64,000 nt of DNA from the IMG/VR virus record IMGVR_UViG_3300033233_000001, positions 62,001 to 126,000 of that record; one strand, written 5' to 3'. The notes below the pieces were generated by a model, which saw nothing but the letters and a program-made list of their open reading frames with translations, did no database searches and had not been told where the DNA came from. Shown piece by piece: positions 691 to 38,996 of this stretch. Position 1 is the stretch's first letter. Every line of letters starts with the position of its first letter. A program made the translations under genes and the position numbers.

Positions 691-748
691 TCCGGCGTGT
701 CTGCCGGCTCACGTCCATCTATCTAGCAATCGCCCCGTGCGCTGTCAA
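691..748 (-). promoter_or_regulatory. sigma70-like promoter (TTGACA 743-748) plus leader hairpin CCGGC-AGACAC-GCCGG
   Basis: TTGACA, TAGAT -10-like box, hairpin shared with seven other leaders. Confidence 0.7.
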
Positions 749-978
749 GCGTCTGTCGCAACGTTTCGCAGCAGGGTCAGACCCGGCGAGTGAGCGCTTC
801 TTGTCGGTCATCGTCTCCTCCTTCTCGTGCGTCGCGCGCTGCTCTCGGTACCGGCTTCTCCCCCGGCCTAGAATGGGGGCGTCTTTGACCGGTCGGTTGG
901 CTTCTGGCCGTCGCCTCTGCCGCTTGGCCCTTTGCATGACCGAGCCCGCTCCGAGAGCAGCGCGCGACGCGCGCGCGT

Positions 979-1398
979 TCAGCCGTAAACGAGTTCTCCC
1001 AGAAGCGAAAGCTGCACCAGCACATCTCCAGTGATCGCGTCGTACTGGTCGGCGACGAAAGCCGCGAAGTGCTTCGGGTGCTTCGCGGCCATCAGGTCGA
1101 GACCGCGCTGGATGACCTTGCCGTTGAGCACGAGCGGCTCGTAGTCCTTGTCGCCCTCGTCCGTGCCCGTGTCGTCGTCGTCGACGCGGCAGACGACCGC
1201 GCCGCCCTGTACCGGGTAGTCGCAGTACTCGTGGATCATGCCGTCGCCGAGCAGCGGCTTCACCGCGCCGCGCGGCTTGCGGTACGTCATGATCCGGCAC
1301 CAGCTGCCGCAGCCGTAGCTGCCGCCCTCGAATGCCGAGCAGAGCAGGCCGGCGACCTTCTCCGCTGTGATCTCCGTCGTGACCGTGAACGCGCGCAT
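979..1398 (-). CDS. phage hypothetical protein (C-terminal DAITGDVLVQLSLLGELVYG)
   Basis: 139 aa ORF with RBS and promoter; C-terminal motif resembles a recurrent phage family. Confidence 0.75.
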   Translation of the reverse strand: MRAFTVTTEITAEKVAGLLCSAFEGGSYGCGSWCRIMTYRKPRGAVKPLLGDGMIHEYCDYPVQGGAVVCRVDDDDTGTDEGDKDYEPLVLNGKVIQRGLDLMAAKHPKHFAAFVADQYDAITGDVLVQLSLLGELVYG

Positions 1399-1417
1399 GG
1401 GTCTGTCTCTCTTTCAG

Positions 1418-1473
1418 GTCGCCGTGTTGGGCGACTCACAAGCGTACTCCAGCAATGCTCGCAGCGGTGTCAA
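1418..1473 (-). promoter_or_regulatory. promoter (TTGACA 1468-1473) plus leader hairpin GTCGCC-CAACAC-GGCGAC
   Basis: perfect 6-bp stem with NNACAY loop directly before the RBS. Confidence 0.7.
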
Positions 1474-1477
1474 GCGC

Positions 1478-1771
1478 CTACAAGCCGATTGCCGCGATTG
1501 CGGTCGCGAGGTCCGCCCCGCGCCCGATGTACGTGAGCGGTGTCGGCGTGTAGCCGTGGTCGCAGCGCGATGCGTGTTCTGGCAGGAAGACGCCGGGGTA
1601 CAGCGTCGCGTCGGTGACGGCCACCGTGAAGCGCCCGCCGCGAGCGTAGGCTCGCACCTGACCGCCGCGAGCGCGGACGTCGCGCAGAAGCTCTAGGCCG
1701 TTCTCGACGGCGTGACGGCTCATGGTCAGACGCATCGATCCTCCATCGTGGGCGGCAGCGCGCGGTGGCAC
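1478..1771 (-). CDS. hypothetical protein (start uncertain)
   Basis: in a contiguous minus-strand gene run. Confidence 0.5.
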   Translation of the reverse strand: MPPRAAAHDGGSMRLTMSRHAVENGLELLRDVRARGGQVRAYARGGRFTVAVTDATLYPGVFLPEHASRCDHGYTPTPLTYIGRGADLATAIAAIGL

Positions 1772-2097
1772 GCGCGGTACGTAGCCTCGAACGCCTCAAG
1801 CTCCGACCAGTCCTTGCGCCGGAGGTTGAGCACGGCCTTGACGTGGACGTGTGCCGCGTCGCGCGTTCGGAATGACGCTTCGTTGTAGAGGTACGCGGTC
1901 CCGCCGACGCCGATGAAGAGGTCGCACGGGTTGTACGAAGCTCCGTCCAACGGCAACCACAGCCAGACGGTCGTGCCCTGCGGGTTCGAGATCTTGTAGC
2001 CTCGTCGAATGAGCCGCTGTGCGATCCAGCGGTCCGACGCCGAAAGCTCGCGCAGTGCGTCTCGTCGACGCCAGGCTTCTGCGGCCGCAGGCGTCAT
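1726..2097 (-). CDS. hypothetical protein
   Basis: ATGA overlap with upstream gene; protein-like composition. Confidence 0.6.
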   Translation of the reverse strand: MTPAAAEAWRRRDALRELSASDRWIAQRLIRRGYKISNPQGTTVWLWLPLDGASYNPCDLFIGVGGTAYLYNEASFRTRDAAHVHVKAVLNLRRKDWSELEAFEATYRACHRALPPTMEDRCV

Positions 2098-2516
2098 GCG
2101 CTCGCGCGCTCCTGTTCGTAGCTGCCGAAGCTCGGGTAGACCTCTACGCCGCGCTCGTTGAGAGCGGCGCGGATGCGGTACGTCGCCAGCTGGAAGTCAC
2201 GCGCCGTGTGCCCGTCGGGGCGCAGCGTCGGCGTGTAGCCCGTGTGCGGCCGACAGCCGGAGAGCAGGTCGTCGAGACTGCGCGCTGCCGTGACCATCGC
2301 GACGTCGGCGTCGATGCCGACGCGCACGCCGAAGCGCCCGTCTGCGAGCACGACGATCGCGCCGCGCCGAAGCAGCTTCTTGGCGTACGTCCACCAGCCC
2401 TGGCAGATCGGCTCGTACGAGGGCAGCGCGTAGATCCAGCCGCCGTGCCAGCCGCGCGCCGTGCCGGTCTTCTTGGCGTATGCCTTGGCCGCTGCCTCGA
2501 TGGTCGAGTAGCTCAT
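2094..2516 (-). CDS. hypothetical protein (MSYSTIEAAAK...)
   Basis: ATG 2516 overlaps the stop of 2513-2722. Confidence 0.65.
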   Translation of the reverse strand: MSYSTIEAAAKAYAKKTGTARGWHGGWIYALPSYEPICQGWWTYAKKLLRRGAIVVLADGRFGVRVGIDADVAMVTAARSLDDLLSGCRPHTGYTPTLRPDGHTARDFQLATYRIRAALNERGVEVYPSFGSYEQERASA

Positions 2517-2722
2517 GACTCGATCTCCTCCTTCTCGTCGTCGTCGTCGCACTTCTCCTCGGCGTCGCACTCTTCGCAGGCTTCGCGGGCCTGCTCCGGG
2601 TGTTCCGGGCAGATCTCGTGGACGTAGACGTGCTCCTCGCCGTCCTTCCGGTAGATGGCCGCGCGCGAGTCGGCGGCCTCGCGCTCGAAGAACCCGTCTT
2701 CGAAGATGCCGTACTCGCTCAT
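2513..2722 (-). CDS. small acidic Cys/His-containing hypothetical protein
   Basis: RBS, leader hairpin and promoter upstream. Confidence 0.65.
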   Translation of the reverse strand: MSEYGIFEDGFFEREAADSRAAIYRKDGEEHVYVHEICPEHPEQAREACEECDAEEKCDDDDEKEEIES

Positions 2723-2742
2723 GGTCTCTCTCTTCCTTCCGG

Positions 2743-2799
2743 GCCAGCATGTCTGCCGGCTCACACAAGACATTCTAACCGGGCATCAACCGATGTCAA
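2743..2799 (-). promoter_or_regulatory. promoter TTGACA-N16-TAGAAT plus leader hairpin GCCGGC-AGACAT-GCTGGC
   Basis: near-consensus -35/-10 boxes. Confidence 0.8.
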
Positions 2800-2866
2800 G
2801 CGTCGCCAGAAAAGAAAGTTGTTTGCTCGACGAAAGGCGCGTAGAGAGAGGTACAAACCAGCCGCA

Positions 2867-3046
2867 AAATGACCATACATGACCATCGCGATTGCCGGCT
2901 CTGTACGCCCCGCCACGCGGCCAGTTTTCGAGCCCTCTCAGCGTAGCATCGACGTCGCCGGAGTCGAACGCTCGCGACTGGCACGGAGATTGGCGATGGC
3001 CGAAAATGTCAACGGTTTCGGGCTGTCCTACATGCTACTACTGGAA
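2867..3046. repeat. ~180-bp non-coding element, copy 1 (copy 2 at 39065-39244)
   Basis: collinear shared blocks AAATGACCATA..TGACCATCGCGATTGCCGGC, AGTCGAACGCTCGCGACTGGCACG (24/24), GTTTCGG, TACTACT. Confidence 0.85.
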
Positions 3047-3158
3047 AATCCTGTTCGGCCGCACGGCTCGTGCGTTGTGGCTGGACAGGGCGACAGAGGT
3101 GGCGGTCGGCGGTGATAGCTGGCATAGAGAGTGTCCGGCGGATTCTTTTGCGCGACGA

Positions 3159-3213
3159 TTGACGACGCTGCGACAGATGTTAGAATGTGGTCGAAGCTGG
3201 CAGACACGCTGGC
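3159..3213 (+). promoter_or_regulatory. promoter TTGACG-N16-TAGAAT plus leader hairpin GCTGGC-AGACAC-GCTGGC
   Basis: -35 3159-3164, -10 3181-3186, hairpin 3196-3213, GGAGG RBS. Confidence 0.8.
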
Positions 3214-3230
3214 CCGGAGGAGAGACGAAC

Positions 3231-3437
3231 ATGACGACGAAGACGCTCACCGTGCCCGGCCACTTCCCCGCGCCCAAGGCGCGCCGCTTTGCCGGATGCG
3301 ACGTGAAGGTCGAGTTTTGTCTCCCGGCGCCGGGCGTCGGGAAGTTGAAGACGATCGACGTGGTGTTGTCGCGAGACCATGCGAAGGCGCTCGTCGCTTC
3401 GCTCACGGCGTTGCTGTCAGAGATGGGGCAGTCGTGA
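3231..3437 (+). CDS. hypothetical protein (MTTKTLTVPG...)
   Basis: GGAGG RBS; first gene of the plus-strand unit. Confidence 0.65.
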   Translation: MTTKTLTVPGHFPAPKARRFAGCDVKVEFCLPAPGVGKLKTIDVVLSRDHAKALVASLTALLSEMGQS

Positions 3438-3775
3438 ACGCCGTGGACGGCTGGAGGGTTGCGGTGAGAACGCAGGGCGGTGCGGTGACCGCGTGGCAGC
3501 AGTGCTACCGCTCCGCTCCGGAGTTCAACAACCGCGAGTGGTACAGGATCGAGGGCATGTCGCCGGCCGGCGACTGGACTGCGTCGCTGTACGACTCGGG
3601 TCAGCACGGCTACAACTACCCGGCCGCGGCATTGCCGGTCGTTCGCGCTGCCATCCGTCGCGCCGTGGCCAAGCTGGTCAAGGCCGAGGAAACGTGCGGC
3701 GGCGCGTACTATCGCCACCTTCAGGACACCATCCGGCCGTACGTGAGCACGCCGCCCTACGCGAGCGCGCGATGA
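3434..3775 (+). CDS. hypothetical protein
   Basis: GTGA overlap with previous gene. Confidence 0.6.
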   Translation: MNAVDGWRVAVRTQGGAVTAWQQCYRSAPEFNNREWYRIEGMSPAGDWTASLYDSGQHGYNYPAAALPVVRAAIRRAVAKLVKAEETCGGAYYRHLQDTIRPYVSTPPYASAR

Positions 3776-4047
3776 CTGCGACGAAGCGAGCGGACACCAC
3801 GTTGATCGCGGTCACGAAGCGCACTATCAGCTTCGAGGGCAGCATCGAGTACATCGCGGCCGACGTGAAGCACTCGGGCAGGGCCTACGCGATCAAGGCG
3901 ATGCGGATCGACGGGCGCCCCGACCTCGGCGTCTACGAAGCGCGGCGTGTCTTCACGCTCTCGAACGGCAGCGCACAGGAGTCGCCCCATCGTTCGCCAT
4001 CGCGCATCAACCGTGCGATCGAGGACGGGCTGCGAGGCGTGCTGTGA
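3772..4047 (+). CDS. hypothetical protein
   Basis: ATGA overlap with previous gene. Confidence 0.6.
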   Translation: MTATKRADTTLIAVTKRTISFEGSIEYIAADVKHSGRAYAIKAMRIDGRPDLGVYEARRVFTLSNGSAQESPHRSPSRINRAIEDGLRGVL

Positions 4048-4105
4048 GCGTTCTCCGGCTGGACGACGAGCGTCTGACGCTGCTGCGCTTTGTTGCGATA
4101 GACGC

Positions 4106-4163
4106 TTGACAGCGCCTGTGCTTGGGCTAGATTCACGTCACATGAGCCGCCGAACATGGTGGC
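4106..4163 (+). promoter_or_regulatory. promoter TTGACA-N16-TAGATT plus leader hairpin GCCGCC-GAACAT-GGTGGC
   Basis: -35 4106-4111, -10 4128-4133, hairpin 4146-4163. Confidence 0.75.
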
Positions 4164-4175
4164 CGGGAGCAGACG

Positions 4176-4475
4176 GTGATGCGTGTGTACCATGCGAAGT
4201 TGAGCGAGAGCGGTCGGATGTACGACCCGGCTTTCGACGGCGAGCGACCGTTCAATGCCGAGGGCTACGACCTCGTGGCGACCGTCGAAGGGTTCGGCCT
4301 CGACGAGGCGTTCTCGCGGACGAACACGATCGACTTCCCCTGGTGGGAGAACGCGTGCGTCGTCAAGACCGTGGACGGCGGCGTGCGCTCGACGTCGGTG
4401 GGCGACGTGATCGTCGATGCCGATGGCGTCGCGTGGCGCGTCGAGGCGACGGGCTTTCGGCAGGTGGCGTCGTGA
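4176..4475 (+). CDS. YodL-like domain protein
   Basis: LDEAF..TN...RSTSVGDVIV...GF pattern typical of YodL-like domains. Confidence 0.6.
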   Translation: MMRVYHAKLSESGRMYDPAFDGERPFNAEGYDLVATVEGFGLDEAFSRTNTIDFPWWENACVVKTVDGGVRSTSVGDVIVDADGVAWRVEATGFRQVAS

Positions 4476-6920: not shown

Positions 6921-6921
6921 G

Positions 6922-24295: not shown

Positions 24296-25078
24296 ATGAC
24301 GAACGCAGCTGGGCCCGAAGAGATCGAGGATGACGACGGCGAGGACGAGCATCTCGTCGAGATGCTCCGTAAGCCGCACAAGAAACTGTCGCAGGTGCTG
24401 CTGAAGTACCGCGAGTCGTTCTGGACGATGGGGCTGTCGAACCTGCGGACGCAGGTGCTCGGGCGCGGCCGATTCGGCGTCGCCTACAAGATCGACATCG
24501 GCGGCGCACCGTCGGTCTTGAAGGTAACGCGCGACCCGTACGAGACGATCAGCAGCTTCCTGCTCCAGAACAAGAAGACTTCTCGCGTCGTGCCGATCTT
24601 CAAGGTCTGGCAGTGTGCCAAGAGCGTGACGCGTTCGAAGGACGGTCTGCTCTGGTGCGTCGTGCACCGGCAGCTACTGAACCCGGTAAACAAGCGCGAC
24701 GCGAAAATCTTGGAGTTCCTCTACTCGCTCTACTGCGACGACGACGTCGATCTCTGGCTCCCGAAGCTCGGGCCGAGTGGACGCGCGATGCGGGCGAAGT
24801 GGAAGGACTTCATCGACGACCAGTACCAGGGCCAGCAGCGTGATCGCGTCCTAACCGTCCTGAACGACGTCTCGGTCGGCGCCGCCGAGCTACGCAAGCT
24901 CGGGTACGTCTGGGCCGACTGCCACTCGGATAACATGATGAGAGACGAGAGCGGCGTGCTGCGCATCTCTGATGTTGGATGGGGCATTCCTCAGCGCGAT
25001 GGCAGGACGGTGCCACCCGACTTCACAGTCGAGGCCGCGCGCGAATATGTCAGGGCGCTAGAGGGCGCGGCCAGCTAG
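24296..25078 (+). CDS. protein kinase-like fold enzyme
   Basis: LGRGRFGVAY, VLK, DCHSDN (catalytic loop), ISDVG (DFG-equivalent). Confidence 0.85.
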   Translation: MTNAAGPEEIEDDDGEDEHLVEMLRKPHKKLSQVLLKYRESFWTMGLSNLRTQVLGRGRFGVAYKIDIGGAPSVLKVTRDPYETISSFLLQNKKTSRVVPIFKVWQCAKSVTRSKDGLLWCVVHRQLLNPVNKRDAKILEFLYSLYCDDDVDLWLPKLGPSGRAMRAKWKDFIDDQYQGQQRDRVLTVLNDVSVGAAELRKLGYVWADCHSDNMMRDESGVLRISDVGWGIPQRDGRTVPPDFTVEAAREYVRALEGAAS

Positions 25079-25286: not shown

Positions 25287-25308
25287 CGCGCGCGGATCGA
25301 GCCGATCT

Positions 25309-25643
25309 GTCACCGGTTTCAGGGCACCGGGCAGCCATTACGATCGAGCGGACCTCGCGATGGGTGACCTCGTCACCGTAGTCGTCACCGGTTTCAGGGC
25401 ACCGGGCAGCCATTGCGATGCGTCCAAGGGGCAGTACGGTGCTCTGCTGGCATTCGCGTCACCGGTTTCAGGGCACCGGGCAGCCATTGCGATCGCGACG
25501 TGGCCGCGGCCTTCTTGCGCTGCAGCGTGGACGTCACCGGTTTCAGGGCACCGGGCAGCCATTGCGATCGACTTCCAGAGCGTCTGCGATCAGCAGGAGT
25601 CTCTCTCGTCACCGGTTTCAGGGCACCGGGCAGCCATTGCGAT
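25309..25643 (-). CRISPR. CRISPR mini-array: 5 repeats of 36 bp (plus strand GTCACCGGTTTCAGGGCACCGGGCAGCCATTGCGAT), 4 spacers of 38-39 bp; no cas genes in window
   Basis: repeats at 25309, 25384, 25458, 25533, 25608; repeat at 25309 has one mismatch (leader-distal); internal CCGGT/ACCGG hairpin. Confidence 0.97.
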
Positions 25644-28800: not shown

Positions 28801-29129
28801 CGGTACACGAGGAGCGCTAGGCTGTGGAGCGTGCGGGCTGGGTCGTCTTCGAGACCGACGCCAGGAAGCCGCTTCTTGAGCTTCTTGTTCAGGTCTTCGG
28901 CGGCCGAGACGTTGAAGGCGACGATGCAGATGCGCGAGAGTCGCGCGCCGTGGTACTCGACGAGGTGAGCGACGCGCTCAACCATGCAGGTCGTCTTACC
29001 GCTCCCAGCCACGCTGCCTGCTAGGAGCGGGCCGTCCTTGTGCTGGACGATCGCGCGTTGGGCGGGCGTGAGCAGGTCGACGAGCTTCGGCGGCTCGACC
29101 TTCGGCGCCTTCTTCTTCCTCGCGGCCAA
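25842..29129 (-). CDS. uvrD: UvrD/PcrA/Rep SF1 helicase containing an intein
   Basis: AGSGKT, VDEAQD, VGDAGQALYSFR, ENFRS, TIHK/SKGLEY, YVAVTRA; likely TTG start at 29129. Confidence 0.92.
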   Translation of the reverse strand: MAARKKKAPKVEPPKLVDLLTPAQRAIVQHKDGPLLAGSVAGSGKTTCMVERVAHLVEYHGARLSRICIVAFNVSAAEDLNKKLKKRLPGVGLEDDPARTLHSLALLVYRSEESNRSANYGNVEALWNKAIREAAASLGIQKPDVDLVKAFSSKVRNDYLPVPPLPFSPLSGDFDLSKVHTDLLAAADIIIEKKRDPRHGIEDLIRLFYAADNARRAGRVEGANGFPFATFDDILWEAARIVEHDEDIRQIWQQRYDYIIVDEAQDLCEAQWQLIELLASGHRNLVVVGDAGQALYSFRQARPEHLLSFAERWGCGAVYMEENFRSGSDILDCGNRVLDAMAPNDKLPMHLKPTREIRGFVGRLTSSTSAVEAAAIANLCAEQKRRGREWRDMAILIRLNAQSKDIELEFFRQKVPLRMVSGTSFFGLKEAKAMLAYFRLILGKAEEDDLYQALTNPSRYLGRAFVDSVARVDKSDGDWAERIERCDAYHGRARDAAFQFVEQIKEWRGSMLRGATPAQLLERIIDRTQYVQWHRREQAEGDESSSFTNTMARIRSFAEGFDTVEVMLTIVDEMRAQQRAAAQSRNAVSVITIHKCVSPETLVDTDRGTTPISLAHDTGTVATTAGMRQYQAPVRYAKCKMLRMTTRYGYEISVTSDHGLMSWDGSSYVPVPAATLRVGDFLRLKLGTERRQRGRAPRMPLAPGGLDIRTVRHTIPKHLTEEVAEFLGLMVADGTVFRSGFRTTKADLDVIDRFGDLCCRIFGPRVHATKWYVPGKRTGWYNAEVCSVMIADWLRSVGGLSPHKKAIPETIWQTSRQTQVAFLRGLFEDATVNIKDDGRMDHIAFTTKYRDIGFGVQQLLLRHGIITSRFKVRMKTAGRLHDAWRVDAYGQQAAVFASRIGFVSARKNRQSNAAVSPETNTLIPMSKTLARALPRTATTKFDRANAVSRGYVSRHVARKFGLSEDLAFHHDQIEKIERYVGDAMCIEVPGHGRFLQNGFDGCNSKGLEYPVTFIPGMVAANWPVPWGTEREELRCFYVAVTRARDECWISTYTHGDDISGEPVTPSPYLRFVPQSTGAPTSPALPASEDNQLALI
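26121..27344 (-). mobile_element. intein (408 aa) with LAGLIDADG homing endonuclease in UvrD
   Basis: TIHK|CVSPET... TSDHGL ... FLGLMVADG, FLRGLFED ... FDGCN|SKGLE; lower GC. Confidence 0.92.
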
Positions 29130-29140
29130 CTGGCAGCCGG

Positions 29141-29824
29141 CTACTTCTTCGGCTCGGCTCGCGGAACGGCCTGTACGACCGCCTCGATGTCCGGCTCGCC
29201 AGTTGCGCATGCGTCGAGCACGGCGCGCGCGACGCGCATTCCGTACGGGTCGGGACCCCAGATGATGCGGATCACAGGCTCCTCGGTATCGTCGGCGCGG
29301 GCCACGACCGGAAGCGTGTCGTACATCGGCTTGTCGTGACCGTGGATGGCGACGAGCGCGGCCCAGAGCCAGCGAGGAACCTCGACTGCTCGGATCGGGG
29401 GAAGGGGCGGTGCCGGTTCGCCGAGACGGCTGTGCGCTGCTGGTCGCATGGCATCGCTCATATGGCCGTGAAGGAAGTAGGAGTCGAGCACCGTGAGGGC
29501 GTCCTTCCTGACTTGTGGTAGCGGCGCGGGCGTGGCTGGCGCTTTGGCCGTGAGCCCGACAGCTACCGGGTCGAGCTTGATGTGCGTGCAGAGCGATCGG
29601 AGCACGTCTTCATCGATGCGCAGCGACACGGCGTCCGTATCCGTACGCCTGTCGACGGTCACGCGCTCGACGCGGCCACGCCATCGCAAGATCGCGTCGC
29701 GCGTCGCGCTGCTCTGGATGTCGAGATGTCCGAAGTTGACCGCCGACAGCATCATGCCAGCGTCGGCCATCGCGCGCTGAAGGCGCGTCAGTGCGTTACT
29801 GTGTTCGACTAGAATGATATCCAT
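29141..29824 (-). CDS. hypothetical protein (MDIILVEH...)
   Basis: TGATG overlap with the ParB-like gene. Confidence 0.65.
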   Translation of the reverse strand: MDIILVEHSNALTRLQRAMADAGMMLSAVNFGHLDIQSSATRDAILRWRGRVERVTVDRRTDTDAVSLRIDEDVLRSLCTHIKLDPVAVGLTAKAPATPAPLPQVRKDALTVLDSYFLHGHMSDAMRPAAHSRLGEPAPPLPPIRAVEVPRWLWAALVAIHGHDKPMYDTLPVVARADDTEEPVIRIIWGPDPYGMRVARAVLDACATGEPDIEAVVQAVPRAEPKK

Positions 29825-30744
29825 CAATCCTCGTCCTTGCTCAGGAAGCCGATTTCTTTGAGCGCGCTCCGCAGGCCCTTCACGCGGCGGTCCTGGTTCG
29901 GCTCTCCGCAGATCCACTTGAGCAGCGCCTGCTCGCTCGGTTCGAGCGCGTCCATGAACGCCTCGTGCTCGACGAGCTTGCGGATCGTAGCGGCGCCCAC
30001 GCGGCGGCGGATCGCGTGGCCGTTGCTGCTGCCGCGCTTGCGGCGCGCGCGCGCCTCCTTCGCGTCGCTGGCGGAGATCGTGACGCCGAGGCGCTCGCAC
30101 TCGGCGAGGATCTTGTCCTGCTCCTCCTCCGAGAGGTCCGAGTACTGGATGGCAGTACTGGGGCTCCAGATGCCGCGGCGGACGGCGTCCTGCGCCTTCT
30201 TGCCGAGCGTGAGCACCTGAAGCCACTGCGTGACCGCCTGCTCGGACACGCCGTTGTCGATGGCGATGTCCTTGAGCGACAGACCTCGGTCCTTCGAGCG
30301 CGCGGCGCTTTCGGCCTTGACCATGTAGTCGCTGTTCTTGTGGAGGTTCGCGGCCACGCCGAGGCGGATCTGCTTGACGGCGTCGCCGGCTTGCTGCTTC
30401 GGGATGAACGGGACCCGAATCAGCCGCTCTTCCAGCTGCTTGCCGGAGTACTCCGCGCGCAGGCGCTCGTTCGCCGCGCGTGCCCACTTCGTGCGCTGGC
30501 GTCCGTCGATCACGACCGCGCGCGCCGCGCCGCCCGGCAGGGTCTCCTTGCGGATGAGACCAGGCTTGAGCACGCCGTGCGTCATCACGTTCGCGATGTC
30601 GGCCTCGGTAACCGGGATGTGAATGCGCTCGTCGTAGAGCGGATGCTCTGGCCCGTCCTTCGTGTCGAGCCCGATGATCACGACATCTTCAGCATGAAGA
30701 TAGAATCCGTTGACCCGCGGCCCATCGAACAGCTGTCCACTCAT
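29824..30744 (-). CDS. ParB/Srx N-terminal domain protein with HTH
   Basis: HPLYDER, GVLKP, VIDGRQR, HTH (LSLKDIA..GVSEQAV). Confidence 0.8.
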   Translation of the reverse strand: MSGQLFDGPRVNGFYLHAEDVVIIGLDTKDGPEHPLYDERIHIPVTEADIANVMTHGVLKPGLIRKETLPGGAARAVVIDGRQRTKWARAANERLRAEYSGKQLEERLIRVPFIPKQQAGDAVKQIRLGVAANLHKNSDYMVKAESAARSKDRGLSLKDIAIDNGVSEQAVTQWLQVLTLGKKAQDAVRRGIWSPSTAIQYSDLSEEEQDKILAECERLGVTISASDAKEARARRKRGSSNGHAIRRRVGAATIRKLVEHEAFMDALEPSEQALLKWICGEPNQDRRVKGLRSALKEIGFLSKDED

Positions 30745-30808
30745 CGCGCATGCCTCCCGGCGCGCATGTCCGCGCGCACGTCTGTTGTCTGCCCGTCTCT
30801 GCCCGTCT

Positions 30809-31123
30809 CTACTGGCCGGCGTGCTCGGCTTCGCCCGCCTCGTCGCCCACCTTCCCGAACTTGATCACGACCTGGGAACTGATCGTCAGCGAGATCTCGT
30901 CGCCGCGCAGCAGCTTGATGCCCTTCAGCCGCTGGTCCGTCTGATCGATCCCCTTGTCCTGAAGCAGCTTCCGTGCTTCCGACGCCCCCTTGCAGACGAA
31001 GACCTCGTACGTCTGCGTGCCGGCGACCGGCAGGAGCAGCCAGAGCGGCCGCGCCTCGCGGGTCTTCCTCTTCTTCTTGCCGTCCCCGTTCGTCGTCCCC
31101 GTCGTCTCGTTCTCGGTGCCCAT
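30809..31123 (-). CDS. hypothetical protein
   Basis: GGAGG RBS before MGTENE. Confidence 0.65.
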   Translation of the reverse strand: MGTENETTGTTNGDGKKKRKTREARPLWLLLPVAGTQTYEVFVCKGASEARKLLQDKGIDQTDQRLKGIKLLRGDEISLTISSQVVIKFGKVGDEAGEAEHAGQ

Positions 31124-31290: not shown

Positions 31291-31554
31291 TTAGACCACG
31301 GCGCCCTGCGCCTTGAGGAATGCGTCGACCTGGGCGGGCCGGATGCGCCAGCTGCCGCCGAGCTTGAACGCCAGTAGCGTGCCGCTGCTGATCCAGCGCT
31401 TCACCGTCTCGGGGTGCACGCCGCAGTGCTTGGCGGCTTCCACGACCGTCAGGCAACTGGCGGCGTCGGAAAGCCTCTCGCCGGCCTCGCGCTTCGCGCG
31501 CTCATCGGGAGAGAGCCTGGCGCGCTTCGCCGCGCCGTTCTTCGGCTTGGTCAT
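31291..31554 (-). CDS. excisionase-like helix-turn-helix protein
   Basis: LTVVEAAKHCGVHPETVKRWISSGTLLAFKLGGSWRI. Confidence 0.85.
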   Translation of the reverse strand: MTKPKNGAAKRARLSPDERAKREAGERLSDAASCLTVVEAAKHCGVHPETVKRWISSGTLLAFKLGGSWRIRPAQVDAFLKAQGAVV

Positions 31555-32462
31555 CACCGCGCGCGCGCGGCAGCGATCGTCCGCGTCTCCTTCGGGATCG
31601 AGTCCTCGACGACCTCGGCGGCGCTGGTCTCCGCGATCGCGCCGCCCTGGGCCTCGGCCATGCGCTCGCCGACGACCGCCATCTGACCGACGAGGCGCCG
31701 GAAGCTCTTCATGTGCGGCTTCGCGAGCGCCTCCATGGACGCAGCCATCTGAAGCTCCGCAGCGGCCTTCACGAACGGCGACTGCGGGATCAGCGACGTG
31801 TGTACTGTCATCGACTGCATGCCGAACGCCATCGTCATCTTGACGAACTCGCGGCCCGTCTCGTCCGAGAGTAACGCGAGCAGCATCGGGTTGTCCTTCG
31901 CGAACTCGCGCCAGACGTCGACGAGAAGGTCGCCGACTTCGTCGACCGCTGCGAGCTTCAGCCCGAGCCCGAGCGCGCCCCCCACGTCCTTGGCCTGACC
32001 GATCGCCCTCTCCTTGAGGCCCGGCTTCTCCGTCTTCTCCACTGCTCCGTTCGTCGTCATCTCTTTCTCCTCTTGCGTTGCTGGAACCTGCGCTGCTTCT
32101 TCTGCGCGCCGCGGTGGATTCGCCACTGCGATAGGAACCCACTGCCGCGACGACGAGGACCACTGCATGTCGTACTTGTCGTAGTACGCAGTAGAGCCCG
32201 GTCCGTCGACGCCGGCTTGCATGCACTTTGGGCACATGAAGACGTGTGCGATGCCATCCGGCACGTTGTCGCCCGACACGAGTCGGACCGACCAGCCTGT
32301 GGGCTGCCATCCAGTCGGGCGCTGTTCGGTCGCCCGTGGAAACTTTTTGGCGGCCTGCTCTTCCACCGAGCCGCACGCTGCGCAGAAGCAGTGGTTCGCC
32401 TCGCCACGAGTGATCGGCATGAACGGCTGCTTCATCGGTGCGATTCCGTTGGCCGTGGTCAT
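31554..32462 (-). CDS. hypothetical protein (N-terminal CxxC pairs; internal RBS suggests a second start at MTTNGAV)
   Basis: CAACG, CPKC; helical C-terminal half. Confidence 0.6.
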   Translation of the reverse strand: MTTANGIAPMKQPFMPITRGEANHCFCAACGSVEEQAAKKFPRATEQRPTGWQPTGWSVRLVSGDNVPDGIAHVFMCPKCMQAGVDGPGSTAYYDKYDMQWSSSSRQWVPIAVANPPRRAEEAAQVPATQEEKEMTTNGAVEKTEKPGLKERAIGQAKDVGGALGLGLKLAAVDEVGDLLVDVWREFAKDNPMLLALLSDETGREFVKMTMAFGMQSMTVHTSLIPQSPFVKAAAELQMAASMEALAKPHMKSFRRLVGQMAVVGERMAEAQGGAIAETSAAEVVEDSIPKETRTIAAARAR

Positions 32463-32528
32463 CTCGGGACCCGTTCTAGCAGGACCACGGCAAAGCGCAA
32501 CAACAAAACGCAGCATCGTCTGCCAGCG

Positions 32529-32759
32529 CTACTTCTTGGCCGTCTTGGCGCGCTCCTCGGTCGAGAGAACGATGTCGTGCCGGCACGTCTTGCAGTACAC
32601 GCAGCGTTCGACGAGGCCGTTCGGGTTCCAAACGACCGTGACGTCGTCGCTGTCGTAGTGGACGACGTGGTCCTTGTGCGTGACCGTCAGCCGGCGGACG
32701 CCGCGCCGCTCCTCCGGCGATGGCGGCGTCGCGCGGAACTCGTAGTCGTAGAACCCCAT
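32529..32759 (-). CDS. small hypothetical protein
   Basis: GGAGG RBS; CKTC. Confidence 0.6.
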   Translation of the reverse strand: MGFYDYEFRATPPSPEERRGVRRLTVTHKDHVVHYDSDDVTVVWNPNGLVERCVYCKTCRHDIVLSTEERAKTAKK

Positions 32760-35894: not shown

Positions 35895-36563
35895 TCACGA
35901 CCGCTCTCCGAGCGCGCGCAGCGCGGTCAGGTCGCGCTGGAACGCGTAGAGCAGGCGTCCGCGGCGCTCCTCGCACCAGGCGGTGACGACGCGCTGAACG
36001 TGCGCACGGCCGTCCTCGGCCGTGCAGTCGTCGAAGATCTCGTCCCAGGGATCCAGCGGCATCGTGTCCGGGTGCTCGCTGCTCTCGGCCGCGCCGAGCA
36101 CGACCGTGCGTGCGAAGCATTCGCGCGGGTCCGGGTCGTGCGTCTGTGCTGGCCACTCGGACCACTCGGAAACGCCGACCATCTTCTCGGCCCAGTACAC
36201 GGCGGTGTAGTGCATTGGCCCCTCCGGGCCAGCGAGGTGCCAGCGCATGAACGGCGCGAGCTTCGGGAACGCCGCGACGATCTGCTCGACGCACTGATCG
36301 CATGAGGACAGCCAGTACCTCCGGCCGCCAACCGTGATGAACGGTTCGCCGGGGGAGCGACCCGGCGCATAGACCTCGCCGCAGATCGTGAGGTACGGCA
36401 GCACGTTGCCGCCGCGCGCGTACGCGACCTCGGCGACGACGTACGCGTCCTGCCCCGGCAGCTTCGTCGGTCCGAGCTTGAACGAGAATTCGCCGATCGC
36501 CGCGTTGTCCGCCGCGATCTTGTTCGCGAGCTTCGTGCTGATCGTCTGCGCCAGGTCCGTCAT
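35895..36563 (-). CDS. phage hypothetical protein (MTDLAQT...; RWHL..PEGPMHY)
   Basis: GAGGAG RBS, leader hairpin and promoter upstream. Confidence 0.7.
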   Translation of the reverse strand: MTDLAQTISTKLANKIAADNAAIGEFSFKLGPTKLPGQDAYVVAEVAYARGGNVLPYLTICGEVYAPGRSPGEPFITVGGRRYWLSSCDQCVEQIVAAFPKLAPFMRWHLAGPEGPMHYTAVYWAEKMVGVSEWSEWPAQTHDPDPRECFARTVVLGAAESSEHPDTMPLDPWDEIFDDCTAEDGRAHVQRVVTAWCEERRGRLLYAFQRDLTALRALGERS

Positions 36564-36576
36564 GTCTCTCTCCTCT

Positions 36577-36638
36577 GGCCCGGCCATGTGCGGCGGGCTC
36601 TTGTCCGACCATGATAGCGACATCGCAACGCCTGTCAA
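36577..36638 (-). promoter_or_regulatory. promoter TTGACA-N16-TATCAT plus leader hairpin with GCACAT loop
   Basis: -35 36633-36638, -10 36611-36616. Confidence 0.75.
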
Positions 36639-37198
36639 GTACGCGGTCGAAGAAGGTCGCCGAGGCCCTTTGCCCAGCGGCGAATCTCAGGCCGCTTCAT
36701 GGCGGCGCAGATCAACGCGGCGACCGTGTCCACGTTGCCGAGATCGCGCAGGTTGGCGCCGCCGATCGCGAACTCGGCGATATCGGACGGTTCGATCGTC
36801 ATGCCGATGCGTTTGGCCGCGACGATCTCGACCGCGATGGTGTCGATCTCGTGCTGGTTCGCTGCGTTCGTTGTGGCCTGCCATTCGGCCGGCTCATCTG
36901 CATCGGCCTTGGTGTGCTCCGGGAACACCGGAACTGCTTGGCCGACCACCGTCGTCAGTGGTCGGCGCAGCGCGGCGCGCACGCCGCGCCTGAGCACGAC
37001 GACGTGGGCGATCTCGTGGAGCACGGGTTCGATGTAGCCGCGTGGATCGTCCGAGCCGTACACGCCGTATTCCAGCGACTCGCCTTCGGGCCTGACTTCG
37101 GGCCTGACGACGGCACGGAACAGGGACTCGACTCGACGATCTAGTGCCGTACGTGGCCGCGGCGTGATCCAATCGATGTCCGGATCTTCGTAGGCCAC
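36635..37198 (-). CDS. HExxH-motif protein (possible metallopeptidase)
   Basis: VLHEIAH...HE; probable native GTG start at 37198. Confidence 0.55.
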   Translation of the reverse strand: MAYEDPDIDWITPRPRTALDRRVESLFRAVVRPEVRPEGESLEYGVYGSDDPRGYIEPVLHEIAHVVVLRRGVRAALRRPLTTVVGQAVPVFPEHTKADADEPAEWQATTNAANQHEIDTIAVEIVAAKRIGMTIEPSDIAEFAIGGANLRDLGNVDTVAALICAAMKRPEIRRWAKGLGDLLRPRT

Positions 37199-37199
37199 G

Positions 37200-37462
37200 T
37201 CAGTCGTCGCCTTCGAGTAGCCTGTCCGTGCTCGTGCAGTCGACTGAGAGGATGTCGGCGACCGACTCTCCGGTCTCCGCGCCCCATTGCTCGCGTCGCG
37301 CGAGGCGAGCAGCTGGCCACTCATGTTGTAGTCGCGTCCGCAGTCGCAGGTGTTCGTGAAGCCGCGCAGTGCGACATGCTGGCCGCAGTGACAACGACCG
37401 AGCGCTGGCTCGACATAGCCGTTCGCGAGGCGCTTGCGGGGCCGGATGATCTCGATGGTCAT
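37200..37462 (-). pseudogene. small Zn-ribbon protein gene frameshifted by a 5-bp duplication
   Basis: CHCG..NTCDCGRDYNMSGQLLASR continues as EQWGAETGE in another frame; TCGCG TCGCG at 37291-37300. Confidence 0.65.
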
Positions 37463-37996
37463 GGGGTGGGAAGGTACCCGCTCTCTTCGAGATCGTTGAT
37501 GATCTGCACCTGAAGGAGAGCGTTCTCTTCGCGCGACTTCGAGTTCATGAGCTTCGCGACCTTGCGAGCGAAGGCGCGGAGCGCCTCGACCTCGCCCTTC
37601 AGGCTCGCGTTCTCGGCGGCGAGAAGGACGTTCTCTTCCTTGTGCCTGACGGCGGCGAATTGGGCCATGACTACAAATCGTCCCTTCTGTGGTTCCTGCT
37701 CCTGTTCCTGCGCGCGTCGATCGCCGCCCGGAGCGCCTGTCGTGCCTCGTTCACCGTCGCGACCTGTCTCGTCCCGCGCATCTCGATGAGCAGCGCCTCG
37801 GCGGCGGTCTCCACTGCTTCGAGCAGCGTCTTCGGGTGCCGCTCGAAAGCGCGCTCTCGCCGCTCCATGCGGAGCTTCGGGTTGTGCCTCCGGCACCAGT
37901 GACGGCCGTCGCTGGTGATGGTCGTCGCGACCTGTCCGCAAGGGCGGTTGTGGAACCCGGTGCCGACGGACCCGCAGCAACGCTCGTCCGCGTCGC

Positions 37997-38923
37997 TCAC
38001 GACGCCATCTCCGCGGCGAGCGCCATCCAGGCCGCCCGGAGCGCGATCGACACGCGATCGACGGTCGGCGGCTCCGTGGCGGTCACGACGATCGTGGTGT
38101 GCTTGCGTACGCCGTCGAAGTCGGTGCGGCGAACCACGTAGCCGGTCGGGCTCAGCTGGCACGAGATGCTCGGGTTGTACTGCGTCTTCTGGCGCAGCGT
38201 GATGCCGAGTGGCGCGTGCTCGACACGGCACGACCGGTCGGCGAGGAACGGTGCGCGCACGGCGTCGACGATCTTCCGGCACTCGGCGAGCGCAGCCTCG
38301 CGTGCCGGGCGCTCCGCCTCGGACTGGGCGCGCCGGGCGGCCTCGGCCTCGTCCTTGACGCGCTGGCGTGCTGGAGCCGTGAGTACCCAGTCGATGTGCT
38401 CCGCCGAGCCGCCTGCGTCGCGTACGAGGTCGACGACCTGGGAGATGCTCACGCCGCCGTTGCGCACGAGGTCGAACGCGTAGAACGTCAGCGTCGTGCC
38501 CTTCCGACGCGCGAGCCGGCAGCCCTCGACGATGCACTCTTCGAGCGTCGCGCCGCGGTCAGTGATCGCGAACTTGCCGGCGCCGAGGTTCGACAGAAGG
38601 TGACTGCCCATGCACCAGCCGTAGATGTTCGTCGAGAGCGTGTACGGCCGCTCGCCGACGGAGCCGCCGCGGACCTGGTAATCGCAGAGCACGCGATCGG
38701 CGCTGCGGAAGTCGCCGATGGCGCGGTACTTCGCGCGCTCGATCTCGCACCGCGCGTAGTAGGCGCGGACTTCGCTGTCGTCGCCGAGGCGGATCACGAC
38801 GGGTCGCTCGCCGTTGCCGTGGTCAGCAAAACCGACGCCGCAGAGGCCGGCGGTGACCATGCTGCGGATCGCAGCGACGATGTTCTCCCAAGATCCGGTG
38901 ACGGGCGCGACGGTCTCGAACAT
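37997..38923 (-). CDS. hypothetical protein (MFETVAP...)
   Basis: GAGGAGG RBS, hairpin and promoter upstream. Confidence 0.7.
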   Translation of the reverse strand: MFETVAPVTGSWENIVAAIRSMVTAGLCGVGFADHGNGERPVVIRLGDDSEVRAYYARCEIERAKYRAIGDFRSADRVLCDYQVRGGSVGERPYTLSTNIYGWCMGSHLLSNLGAGKFAITDRGATLEECIVEGCRLARRKGTTLTFYAFDLVRNGGVSISQVVDLVRDAGGSAEHIDWVLTAPARQRVKDEAEAARRAQSEAERPAREAALAECRKIVDAVRAPFLADRSCRVEHAPLGITLRQKTQYNPSISCQLSPTGYVVRRTDFDGVRKHTTIVVTATEPPTVDRVSIALRAAWMALAAEMAS

Positions 38924-38940
38924 GGCGGGCTCCTCCTCGG

Positions 38941-38996
38941 GCCGGCGTGTTTGCCGACTCCACAACAGACTTTAGCGATGCCGCGCGCGCTGTCAA
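38941..38996 (-). promoter_or_regulatory. promoter TTGACA-N16-TAAAGT plus leader hairpin GTCGGC-AAACAC-GCCGGC
   Basis: -35 38991-38996, -10 38969-38974. Confidence 0.8.

What the first reader, a model, noticed from the sequence alone, without database searches (positions are those of the whole stretch)
691..38960. Covarying 5'-UTR hairpin with an NNACAY loop in eight transcript leaders
Seen: GC-rich 5-7 bp stems closing a 6-nt loop ending ACAC/ACAT, mostly preceded by GA and just upstream of the RBS. Copies: 691-710(-) AGACAC; 1418-1437(-) CAACAC; 2743-2762(-) AGACAT; 3196-3213(+) AGACAC; 4146-4163(+) GAACAT; 30760-30777(-) GGACAT; 36577-36600(-) GCACAT; 38941-38960(-) AAACAC. Stem sequences differ but pairing is kept (GTCGCC/GGCGAC, GCCGCC/GGTGGC, GCGCGC/GCGCGC). 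Seven copies follow TTGAC[AG] promoters, six with a 16-bp spacer. Inference: a binding site for a phage or host RNA-binding protein (translational switch, boxB-like antitermination or mRNA stabiliser) marking an early regulon.
Basis: partly seen in the sequence, partly recalled or inferred. Interest (0 to 1): 0.8.

Follow-up and report, generated by a model that had tools for sequence, protein, structure and literature searches.

The report
Conserved leader hairpin of phage mRNAs
A huge uncultured phage puts the same small RNA hairpin (variable stem, fixed ACA loop, bulged A) between a host-type promoter and the ribosome-binding site of many of its likely early operons. This looks like a new regulon-wide tag for controlling mRNA stability or translation, but no RNA data exist to prove it.

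Summary
All eight hairpins are at the stated coordinates. Seven follow TTGAC[AG]-16/17-TAnnnT promoters, and each ends 1-4 nt before a Shine-Dalgarno sequence.

The bare motif is only 2.5-3 times more frequent than in shuffles. Position and structure make it significant:
- A covariance model finds seven hits of 30-36 bits, all in leaders. The next best hit scores 15 bits.
- A promoter-plus-loop pattern that does not require pairing gives 6/6 pairs in 11 of 11 hits in this phage lineage, against 3 of 184 hits elsewhere.

The window is part of a 297.7-kb sediment phage contig. I found 12 copies in this genome and 11 in its only relative. Six of eight helix pairs show changes on both sides, and G-U pairs fit only the sense strand. 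Loop positions 3-5 are ACA in 22 of 23 copies. A bulged A and a 2-bp lower helix extend the structure.

There is no Rfam match, and the defining features of nut/boxB, N4 hairpin promoters and PeSL cassettes are not met.

The most likely reading is a 5'-proximal RNA operator and stabiliser for an early regulon, read by an unidentified factor. The transcription start, the early timing and the factor are all inferred.

The parts
669..772 (-). Cassette w1. Upstream element 759-772; -35 TTGACA 743-748; 17-nt spacer; -10 TAGATA. Hairpin 689-711: upper stem and loop 691-708 (GCCGGC AGACAC GCCGGA, outer pair G.A), bulged A at 709. Then SD and ATG 669-671.
   Evidence: (34.4 bits)
1396..1473 (-). Cassette w2. 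-35 TTGACA 1468-1473; 16-nt spacer; weak -10 TGGAGT. Hairpin 1418-1435 (GTCGCC CAACAC GGCGAC). Then SD and ATG 1396-1398.
   Evidence: 33.0 bits
2720..2799 (-). Cassette w3. TTGACA-16-TAGAAT. Hairpin 2743-2760 (GCCGGC AGACAT GCTGGC, one G-U pair). Then SD and ATG 2720-2722. It heads a four-gene operon running down to 1478.
   Evidence: 36.0 bits
3159..3233 (+). Cassette w4. TTGACG-16-TAGAAT. Hairpin 3196-3213 (GCTGGC AGACAC GCTGGC, two G-U pairs that would be A.C mismatches on the other strand). Then SD and ATG 3231.
   Evidence: 30.1 bits
4082..4181 (+). Cassette w5. Upstream element 4082-4095; TTGACA-16-TAGATT from 4106. Hairpin 4146-4163 (GCCGCC GAACAT GGTGGC). Then SD and ATG 4179.
   Evidence: (36.4 bits)
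30742..30781 (-). Copy w6, without a promoter. Hairpin 30760-30777 (GCGCGC GGACAT GCGCGC) lies in the 64-nt gap between gene 30809-31123 and the ParB-like gene 29824-30744. The unpaired base at -1 is U, not A.
   Evidence: 30.1 bits. The ortholog L011 9718-9735 is identical over 18/18 nt while the flanks are at random identity.
36561..36638 (-). Cassette w7. TTGACA-16-TATCAT. Variant hairpin 36578-36598 (GCCCGCC GCACAT GG-C-CGGGC, 7 bp with a bulged C). Then SD and ATG 36561-36563.
   Evidence: Only 11.6 bits with R2. The ortholog L003 4894-4913 has a clean 7-bp stem.
38921..39020 (-). Cassette w8. Upstream element 39007-39020; TTGACA-16-TAAAGT. Hairpin 38941-38958 (GTCGGC AAACAC GCCGGC). Then SD and ATG 38921-38923.
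   Evidence: (35.6 bits). The ortholog L006 10522-10539 differs at two stem positions, and both changes preserve pairing.

Best explanation

Anatomy: 5'-N(U/G)G-A(bulge)-[6-7 bp G+C-rich stem, closing pair C-G]-[NNACAY loop]-[stem]-C(G/C)-3', followed 1-4 nt later by the Shine-Dalgarno sequence.

Proposed mechanism in two layers:
1. By itself, the stable hairpin (-7 to -13 kcal/mol) base-pairs the 5' end. This shields the transcript from 5'-end-dependent decay and keeps the adjacent ribosome-binding site unpaired.
2. The invariant ACA loop core, the C-G closing pair and the bulged A form a recognition surface for one trans-acting factor. The most likely factor is a phage-encoded RNA-binding protein or endoribonuclease. 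Because the site abuts the ribosome-binding site, such a factor could switch translation or stability of the whole regulon together, for example to shut early genes off.

Shown: the structure, its covariation, its strand specificity, its position relative to the promoter and SD, its conservation in a relative, and its restriction to this lineage.

Inferred: that it is transcribed, the transcription start site, the early timing, the existence and nature of the factor, and the direction of regulation.
For: 1. Pairing and covariation. On 20 six-bp copies, 94.4% of cells are paired against 78.9 +/- 1.9 in shuffles and 21-47% in slid registers. Six of eight pairs show changes on both sides. The earlier 15-copy set gave 98.9%.

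2. A test not biased by selecting for hairpins. The pattern CTTGACA-N16-TANNNT-N7-12-RAG-NNNN-C-NNMCAH-G does not require pairing. It gives 6/6 pairs in all 11 hits from the two related contigs. It gives 0 of 64 other IMG/VR hits and 3 of 120 bacterial or archaeal hits with 6/6 pairs.

3. Strand specificity. G-U pairs are frequent: 8 of 20 at one stem position, and two in w4. They would be A.C mismatches on the template strand. All 23 copies are in the sense orientation.

4. The lower helix was not used to pick the copies. Pair (-2,+1) is G-C in 17, A-U in 2 and unpaired in 1. Pair (-3,+2) is paired in 15 of 20. The two together are 85% paired against 69.8 +/- 4.8 in shuffles.

5. Selection on the loop. 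Position 3 is A in 22 and C in 1; position 4 is C in all 23; position 5 is A in all 23. Mean pairwise identity of the 16-nt promoter spacer is 0.36, close to the 0.28 expected for unrelated DNA of this G+C content.

6. Orthologous sites. For w6/r4 the hairpin is identical at 18/18 nt while the 40 nt upstream match at 12/40. In w8/r1 both stem changes preserve pairing. The proteins behind these sites are only 54-64% identical.

7. Specificity. Models R1 and R2 hit only leaders in the window. About 0.8 Mb of unrelated DNA gave nothing above 20.5 bits, apart from one locus that had been fetched for matching the hairpin string.

8. Geometry. The hairpin starts 9-12 nt after the -10 hexamer, so a start site at the usual 7th nucleotide falls 0-5 nt before the stem. 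The hairpin is in the minimum-free-energy fold of 22 of 23 leaders, and the SD region stays largely unpaired in most of them.

9. The copy w6/r4 has no promoter but keeps the hairpin next to an SD. This argues that the function is tied to the ribosome-binding site or to the RNA, not to the promoter DNA.
Against: - No RNA-seq run could be listed for this sequence. Transcription, the start site and the timing are therefore untested.
- No candidate RNA-binding protein was found in the window. Only about a third of the genome was seen.
- Only two genomes carry the motif, and many copies are paralogs that share ancestry. The counts of covarying cells overstate the number of independent events. There are about nine distinct stem and loop types.
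- The bare motif is only 2.5-3 times enriched over shuffles.
- Loop conservation could have another cause, such as loop-specific stability or a contact with RNA polymerase or the ribosome.
- Copy 7 fits the model poorly.
- One leader (r6) has a competing fold.
Confidence: 0.55

Rival explanations
1. The hairpin is purely structural and no dedicated factor reads it. It acts as a 5'-terminal stabiliser, as in the ompA, papA and aprE leaders, and as an insulator that keeps the SD unpaired. The loop is conserved only because these particular loops fold well or because the copies descend from one cassette.
For: - The predicted 5' end is flush with the base of the hairpin.
- The hairpins are stable and the SD region is largely unpaired in most folds.
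- A 5'-terminal stem-loop with few unpaired 5' nucleotides is an established protective element. See the review PMC3997798 and the Emory, Bouvet and Belasco papers it cites.
- No binding protein was found.
Against: - ACA is invariant across about nine different stem types, while the neighbouring promoter spacers have drifted to near-random identity of 0.36.
- The closing pair is always C-G, and a bulged A is kept in 21 of 23 copies. Stability alone does not require any of these.
- w6 and r4 sit inside an operon, not at a primary 5' end.
Confidence: 0.25
2. It is a boxB-like antitermination site. A phage N-like protein binds the nascent hairpin and makes RNA polymerase resistant to termination across each operon.
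For: - The hairpin is promoter-proximal, with a conserved purine-rich loop and a variable stem.
- From my own knowledge, the P22 boxB loop is GACAA and the phi21 boxB has a hexaloop. These resemble AGACAC and GGACAT.
- The operons are long and polycistronic.
Against: - The leaders are only about 35-45 nt long and consist of the hairpin plus the SD, so there is no boxA-like element and no room for one.
- There are at least 23 sites rather than one or two per genome.
- One copy is internal to an operon, directly before a start codon.
- Intrinsic-terminator-like sites are at or below chance in both hairpin regions: 2 against 2.2 expected, and 1 against 5.8.
- No N-like or Q-like family was detected.
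Confidence: 0.08
3. It is a DNA-level element. Candidates are an operator for a dimeric repressor over the start site, an extruded hairpin promoter of the N4 virion-RNA-polymerase type, or a recombination hot spot that shuffles promoter cassettes as T4-type PeSLs do.
For: - It is an inverted repeat centred about 20 bp after the -10 hexamer.
- Identical hairpin types precede unrelated ORFans (w2/r6; w5/g10/g12; r2/r8/r11). Only 3 of the 23 first genes have orthologs behind a hairpin in the other genome. That pattern is what cassette duplication or exchange would give.
- PeSLs are repeated early-promoter, stem-loop and SD cassettes in front of ORFans (PMC2839356).
Against: - The arms vary while the centre is conserved. 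This is the reverse of a dimeric operator.
- G-U pairs break the DNA dyad symmetry and would weaken a template-strand hairpin. In w4 it would keep only 4 of 6 pairs.
- N4 promoters have a 3-nt loop centred at -11 on the template strand, upstream of +1, and need a virion polymerase (PMC4496689). Here the loop has 6 nt, the pairing favours the sense strand, and a strong sigma-70 promoter lies upstream.
- PeSL stem-loops lie between or over the -35 and -10 boxes and act as terminators. Here the hairpin lies after the -10 hexamer and has no U tract.
- A recombination role could coexist with the RNA role and is not excluded.
Confidence: 0.1

Closest known systems
Translational operator hairpins bound by a phage protein. 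Examples are the MS2 and PP7 coat-protein operators, and T4 RegA or gp43 operators for regulon- or auto-repression. The IRE is the eukaryotic analogue: a hexaloop, a 5-bp upper stem and a bulged C on the 5' side. These descriptions are from my own knowledge.
   Same: A short hairpin next to or overlapping the ribosome-binding site. Specific unpaired bases are conserved while the stem sequence is free: a loop plus one bulged purine on the 5' strand. For RegA, many early mRNAs are targeted.
   Different: No sequence similarity. The loop is NNACAY, and the bulge lies 6 bp below the loop. The hairpin stops before the SD instead of containing the start codon. No cognate protein is known. The host phage is a roughly 300-kb dsDNA phage, not an ssRNA phage.
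5'-terminal stabiliser stem-loops, as in the ompA, papA, aprE and T7 gene 10 leaders (review PMC3997798)
   Same: [quoted passage not shown]
   Different: Those are single-gene elements without a shared loop sequence. Here at least 23 leaders share a loop core, a closing pair and a bulge. One copy is not at a primary 5' end.
PeSL cassettes (promoter-early stem-loop) of T4-type phages (PMC2839356, PMC4122927)
   Same: Repeated modules of a strong sigma-70-like early promoter, a G+C-rich stem-loop and an SD in front of small ORFans. Some promoters have an extra upstream element. The same module precedes unrelated genes.
   Different: The PeSL stem-loop sits between or over the -35 and -10 boxes and works as a terminator or attenuator. 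Its stem (GGGG...CCCC) is what is conserved, not the loop. Here the hairpin lies downstream of the -10 hexamer in the leader, has no U tract, and has a conserved loop with covarying stems.
nut/boxB sites of lambdoid phages (lambda, P22, phi21). This comparison rests on my own knowledge.
   Same: A promoter-proximal RNA hairpin with a 5-7 bp stem and a conserved purine-rich loop that is read by a phage protein.
   Different: There is no boxA. There are dozens of sites. Each site is immediately followed by an SD. No N-like gene and no terminators were detected.
Start-associated sequences (SAS) and extended SAS (ESAS) of Cluster K mycobacteriophages (PMC3203893)
   Same: A lineage-specific repeated motif in one orientation, just upstream of the start codons of non-structural genes. 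It often precedes unrelated gene families. Its function is unknown, and its authors proposed a host or phage factor acting on translation.
   Different: The SAS is a 13-bp sequence motif that includes the SD. The ESAS is a pair of 17-bp inverted repeats with conserved arms and a variable spacer. Here the arms vary and the loop is conserved, and the element is coupled to sigma-70 promoters.
Hairpin promoters of the N4 virion RNA polymerase (PMC4496689)
   Same: A 5-7 bp hairpin with conserved loop bases at the start of early transcription units. Stem identity is free as long as pairing is kept.
   Different: In N4 the loop has 3 nt and is centred at -11 on the template DNA strand, and a virion-packaged polymerase is needed. 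Here the loop has 6 nt, the pairing is better on the sense strand, and a consensus sigma-70 promoter lies upstream.

Membership tests
Any Rfam 15 family | Score at or above the family's gathering threshold | tested here: not met
   The only gathering-level hit in the window is a tRNA at 58862-58934. A permissive scan of 600-4300 at E up to 10 gave one irrelevant hit inside a gene at 18 bits.
Lambdoid nut site (boxA + boxB) | A boxA element a few nucleotides upstream of the hairpin | tested here: not met
   Only 9-12 nt separate the -10 hexamer from the stem. No conserved element other than NUGA lies there.
Lambdoid nut site (boxA + boxB) | One or two sites per genome, upstream of terminators that are read through | tested here: not met
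   There are 12 copies in the roughly 95 kb sampled of this genome. Terminator-like sites are at or below chance.
Lambdoid nut site (boxA + boxB) | A cognate N-like arginine-rich protein | tested here: inconclusive
   No antiterminator family was found among the window proteins. About two thirds of the genome was not examined, and N proteins are hard to detect.
N4-type hairpin promoter | A 3-nt loop centred at -11, with the hairpin formed by the template strand | tested here: not met
   The loop has 6 nt. The G-T pairs lie on the sense strand and become A.C mismatches on the template strand.
N4-type hairpin promoter | A virion RNA polymerase gene in the genome | not tested
   None is in the window. 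The rest of the 297.7-kb contig was not available as a whole.
PeSL cassette (T4-type phages) | A stem-loop between or overlapping the -35 and -10 boxes that acts as a terminator for upstream transcription | tested here: not met
   The hairpin begins 9-12 nt downstream of the -10 hexamer, and no T run follows it.
PeSL cassette (T4-type phages) | A repeated sigma-70-like early promoter plus SD in front of ORFans, with the same module before unrelated genes | tested here: met
5'-terminal stabiliser hairpin | A hairpin within about 0-4 unpaired nucleotides of the transcript's 5' end | tested here: inconclusive
   The promoter geometry predicts 0-5 nt. There is no mapped start site, and no RNA run was listed.
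5'-terminal stabiliser hairpin | Removing the hairpin shortens the mRNA half-life | not testable with these tools
   This needs a rifampicin chase on reporter constructs.
Protein-bound translational operator (MS2, PP7 or RegA type) | Conserved unpaired bases on a stem of free sequence, adjacent to the ribosome-binding site | tested here: met
   The loop core is ACA in 22 of 23 copies. The bulge is A in 21 of 23. The stems covary. The SD begins 1-4 nt after the helix.
Protein-bound translational operator (MS2, PP7 or RegA type) | A cognate RNA-binding protein, with repression when it binds | not testable with these tools
   No candidate domain was found in the window. This needs a pull-down or a genetic test.
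Cluster K SAS/ESAS | The 13-bp GGGATAGGAGCCC motif at the ribosome-binding site, with or without 17-bp inverted repeats that have conserved arms | tested here: not met
   The sequences are different, and here the arms vary while the loop is conserved.

The most novel reading that the evidence does not exclude
The hairpin is the address tag of a post-transcriptional switch that covers a whole regulon in a previously unknown lineage of huge phages. One phage-encoded protein would read the bulged A and the ACA loop on every early leader and turn the class off, or on, at a set time. It could be an RNA-binding repressor, or a loop-cutting endoribonuclease playing the role of T4 RegB. The cassettes themselves would spread in front of new ORFans by duplication or recombination.
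Probability: 0.35. Interest if true: 0.7.

Novelty: new variant of a known kind. Interest (0 to 1): 0.55.

Why it matters
If the reading is right, this is a compact RNA element of about 26 nt that marks a whole temporal class of phage mRNAs.

- It would give a handle on how an uncultured phage of about 300 kb, which relies on host sigma-70 polymerase, coordinates early expression after transcription. For large phages that step is known in detail mainly for T4 (RegA and RegB).
- It offers a clean test case with small, portable parts: a promoter, a hairpin and an SD. Stem, loop and bulge can be mutated separately in reporters.
- The hairpin and its unknown partner could become an orthogonal RNA-protein pair for high-G+C hosts.
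- The covariance model can be used to annotate early operons in related metagenomic phages.

Tried and rejected
Searches that found nothing useful:
- Near-identity search against GenBank phages: no match.
- Protein-level search against the same collection: only distant helicase and ParB hits.
- JGI metagenome scan with the SNF2 helicase: only the source contig and one 25%-identical protein.
- Exact hairpin string in IMG/VR: outside the two related contigs it hit only coding sequences of the type E-L-A-N-M-L.
There is no sign of the cassette in cellular genomes, and no host clue.
- RNA sequencing runs: none listed. The only run that holds the sequence is the sediment DNA sample.
- Search for an RNA-binding protein among the window proteins with Pfam and PHROGs: nothing.

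Ideas rejected:
- Intrinsic terminator or attenuator: no U tract, and terminator-like sites are at chance.
- RNA thermometer or SD sequestration: the SD region is largely unpaired in most of the folds.
- Pseudoknot between the ACAC loop and the upstream GUGU: it would leave no linker nucleotides between the loop pairing and the 3' stem strand. This rests on reasoning only.
- CsrA site: a GGA triplet is present in only two of the loops.
- A small upstream ORF starting at the AUG formed by the loop end and the first stem base: present in only 9 of 23 copies, and out of frame with the main gene in the one case checked (w3).
- GTCNGAC as a stand-alone operator motif: not enriched, 45 against 37 +/- 6.

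Full report
**Context**

The window is positions 62001-126000 of a 297,749-bp contig from a sediment metagenome, IMGVR_UViG_3300033233_000001 (the same sequence as Ga0334722_10000009). A second, independent assembly of 297,555 bp carries the same genome in permuted form. G+C is 0.60-0.68.

The gene content is that of a very large phage:
- an intein-containing UvrD-like helicase and an intein-containing RtcB;
- an SNF2 helicase and a ParB-like protein;
- a PurZ-type adenylosuccinate synthetase homolog;
- glycosyltransferases, Cpn10 and PTH2;
- two tRNAs, and many small ORFans.

No GenBank phage is close. Only one relative was found, IMGVR_UViG_3300037483_001170 (106,780 bp). Its SNF2 helicase is 81% identical to the window's, and the first-gene orthologs are 54-64% identical. 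A scan of JGI metagenomes added nothing.

The layout is constant:
- (C)TTGAC[AG], then 16 nt (17 in copy 1), then TAnnnT;
- 9-12 nt that end in (G/N)UGA;
- a 6-bp G+C-rich stem (7 bp in copy 7), a 6-nt loop NNACAY, and the return strand;
- a C, and then 1-4 nt later a purine-rich Shine-Dalgarno sequence, with ATG 8-20 nt after the stem.

The tool's own promoter scan calls five of the seven promoters. In each of the two regions it finds 3 sites against 0.4-0.6 expected. Copies 1 and 2 have weaker -10 hexamers. Copy 6 has no promoter and lies in a 64-nt gap inside an operon.

**Is it more than chance?**

As a bare pattern it is only modestly enriched:
- 15 hits against 6.1 +/- 2.6 in shuffles for stems of at least 5 bp;
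- 7 hits against 2.3 +/- 1.6 for stems of at least 6 bp.

The signal lies in position and context. Seven of the 15 hits lie within 20 nt upstream of a predicted start codon. My estimate of the chance expectation there, from the density of the other 8 hits, is about 0.2.

A covariance model (R2, with filters off) scores seven leader copies at 30-36 bits. Nothing else in 128 kb of both strands exceeds 15 bits. About 0.8 Mb of unrelated DNA gave nothing above 20.5 bits, apart from one locus that had been fetched because it matched the hairpin string. Copy 7 has a bulged C in a 7-bp stem and scores only 11.6 bits. It counts as a member because of its promoter, its loop and its ortholog.

**A test that does not presuppose pairing**

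I searched IMG/VR and the GTDB genome set with CTTGACA-N16-TANNNT-N7-12-RAG-NNNN-C-NNMCAH-G. This pattern fixes the promoter, the loop and the closing pair but leaves four inner stem positions free on each side and sets no partner for the outermost G.
- All 11 hits in the two related contigs form 6 of 6 pairs.
- The 64 other IMG/VR hits form 1-5 pairs.
- Of the 120 bacterial and archaeal hits, three form 6 pairs.

Pairing is therefore a property of this lineage and not a by-product of the pattern.

**More copies**

In the same genome there are further copies:
- two at about 254 kb (L039);
- one at about 296 kb (L077);
- one 1.5 kb to the left of the window (L082).

This gives 12 copies in the roughly 95 kb sampled. 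The relative has 11 copies in about 33 kb sampled. Eight of them lie within 7.9 kb. Three have the loop CAACAA and one has GACCAT.

**Structure**

On the 20 copies with 6-bp stems:
- 94.4% of cells are standard pairs, against 78.9 +/- 1.9 in shuffles and 21-47% in slid registers;
- six of eight pairs show changes on both sides, for example G-C, G-U, A-U and C-G at one position;
- the closing pair is C-G in all 20.

G-U pairs are common. Copy w4 has two, which would leave only 4 of 6 pairs on the template strand. Every copy is in the sense orientation. This points to RNA and not to duplex DNA or a template-strand hairpin.

The helix continues below a single unpaired base, which is A in 21 of 23 copies and U in w6 and r4. 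Pair (-2,+1) is G-C in 17, A-U in 2 and unpaired in 1. Pair (-3,+2) is paired in 15 of 20, with four pair types. These two pairs were not used to find the copies. They are 85% paired against 69.8 +/- 4.8 in shuffles. That is moderate support for a 2-bp lower helix with a bulged A.

The loop composition over the 23 copies is:
- position 3: A in 22, C in 1;
- position 4: C in all 23;
- position 5: A in all 23;
- position 6: C in 11, U in 9, A in 3.

**Selection rather than recent copying**

Among the promoter-bearing copies, the 16-nt spacer has a mean pairwise identity of 0.36. Unrelated DNA of this composition would give 0.28. The loop core and the closing pair are nevertheless invariant.

At orthologous sites:
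- w6/r4: the hairpin is identical at 18 of 18 nt, while the 40 nt upstream match at 12 of 40;
- w7/r10: the upstream match is 9 of 40;
- w8/r1: the two stem differences (U-G to C-G, and G-C to G-U) both preserve pairing.

**Position in the transcript (inferred)**

The usual sigma-70 start is at about the 7th nucleotide after the -10 hexamer. With that start, transcripts would begin inside the NUGA just before the stem. The 5' end would then be flush with, or up to about 5 nt from, the base of the helix.

Leaders folded from that point show the hairpin in the minimum-free-energy structure of 22 of 23 copies, at -7 to -13 kcal/mol. The Shine-Dalgarno region stays largely unpaired in most of them. 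No RNA run could be listed, so the start site is not verified.

**What it is not**

- Rfam: no family matches at the gathering threshold or at E up to 10.
- Terminator: there is no U tract, and terminator-like sites are at or below chance.
- N4-type promoter: those have a 3-nt loop at -11 on the template strand.
- PeSL: those stem-loops sit between or over the -35 and -10 boxes and terminate upstream transcription.
- nut site: there is no boxA and no room for one, there are too many sites, and each is followed directly by an SD.
- SAS/ESAS: the sequences differ, and in ESAS the arms are conserved while the spacer varies.
- Dimeric DNA operator: such a site would conserve the arms, not the centre.

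**Mechanism**

The best-supported reading is an RNA element with two layers.
1. A stable 5'-proximal hairpin is an established protection against 5'-end-dependent decay (review PMC3997798). Here it would also keep the neighbouring ribosome-binding site free.
2. Stability alone does not explain an invariant ACA core, a fixed C-G closing pair and a conserved bulged A across about nine stem types. That pattern is what protein-bound operator hairpins show.

The helix ends 1-4 nt before the Shine-Dalgarno sequence, so a bound factor would be placed to block or modulate 30S binding. Alternatively, a loop-specific nuclease could remove the protective 5' structure.

The promoter-less copy in front of the ParB-like gene fits an RNA or ribosome-binding-site function better than a promoter function. 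I found no candidate factor in the window. It may lie in the unsampled two thirds of the genome, or it may belong to the host.

The label 'early regulon' rests only on the consensus host-type promoters and the ORFan-rich content of the operons.

**Cassette behaviour**

Only three first genes behind hairpins are orthologous between the two genomes. Identical hairpin types precede unrelated ORFans (w2/r6; w5/g10/g12; r2/r8/r11). This fits duplication or exchange of promoter-leader cassettes. It resembles PeSL biology but has not been tested here.

**Verdict**

This is a real, lineage-specific RNA motif that is not in Rfam. It is a new variant of the known kind '5'-leader regulatory hairpin'.

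My confidence in each statement:
- It is a selected RNA structure: about 0.85.
- The two-layer stabiliser-plus-operator reading (best explanation, as a whole): 0.55.
- Within that, a dedicated trans-acting factor reads it: about 0.5.
- It is a purely structural stabiliser: about 0.25.
- It is a DNA-level element: about 0.1.
- It is a boxB-like antitermination site: about 0.08.

Noticed in passing
window 25299-25643: Five copies of a 36-nt repeat (GTCACCGGTTTCAGGGCACCGGGCAGCCATTGCGAT) spaced 74-75 nt apart, with unique 38-39-nt spacers. They lie in a 760-nt non-coding gap next to the intein-containing UvrD gene. This looks like a phage-borne CRISPR-type mini-array, or else replication iterons. 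No Pfam family matched the two genes on its left (23272-24246, 24296-25078), and the gene on its right is the UvrD helicase, so no cas gene was recognised next to it.
   Followed up: partly
window 759-772(-), 4082-4095(+), 32501-32514(-), 39007-39020(-), 46422-46435(-): A second promoter-associated motif, GTCYGAC-N2-4-YGCTGCG-N2-3-TGTTG(C/T)G, lies 0-9 nt upstream of the -35 box. It has 7 matches against 1.8 expected. It accompanies about half of the hairpin promoters in both genomes. It also accompanies promoter-like sites with a weak or shifted -35: two without a hairpin (32501, 46422) and one, g12 in L082, that keeps the hairpin. It is possibly an activator or UP-like site.
   Followed up: partly
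window 2867-3046 and 39065-39244; also L003 9882-9953, L007 3551-3729, L039 4852-4920: A conserved non-coding element of about 180 nt, 72% identical between the two window copies. It sits in divergent promoter regions next to hairpin promoters in both genomes. It is not a conserved ORF, because the conservation runs past the stop codon. Its 3' part carries a weak promoter-like site, TCGGCA-18-TAGAAT, facing the SNF2 gene.
   Followed up: partly
window 55581-56942 (+): An adenylosuccinate-synthetase homolog whose best match is the PHROG of PurZ-type enzymes (phrog_1211, E = 2e-83). The phage may replace adenine with 2-aminoadenine in its DNA.
   Followed up: no
window 25842-29210 (-) and 51906-54569 (+): Both the UvrD-like helicase and RtcB carry an intein with a LAGLIDADG homing-endonuclease domain.
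   Followed up: no
window 58861-58935 (+) and 23598-23674 (+): A tRNA with the anticodon CTA, which would act as an amber suppressor (ARAGORN labels it Pyl), and a tRNA-Ala(CGC). Only the first reaches the Rfam gathering score.
   Followed up: no
window 51204-51216(-), 51856-51868(-), 57938-57950(-); one mismatch at 31177(+), 54586(-), 62672(+): Another intergenic motif, GCTTGCGACAYAC, lies 30-40 nt upstream of start codons in the part of the window that lacks hairpins. It is possibly a different promoter class or an operator.
   Followed up: partly
window 32440-32530 (-): The promoter-like site TTGCGC-16-TAGAAC lies only 10 nt upstream of an in-frame ATG at 32450. This would give a nearly leaderless mRNA for gene 31554-32450.
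   Followed up: no
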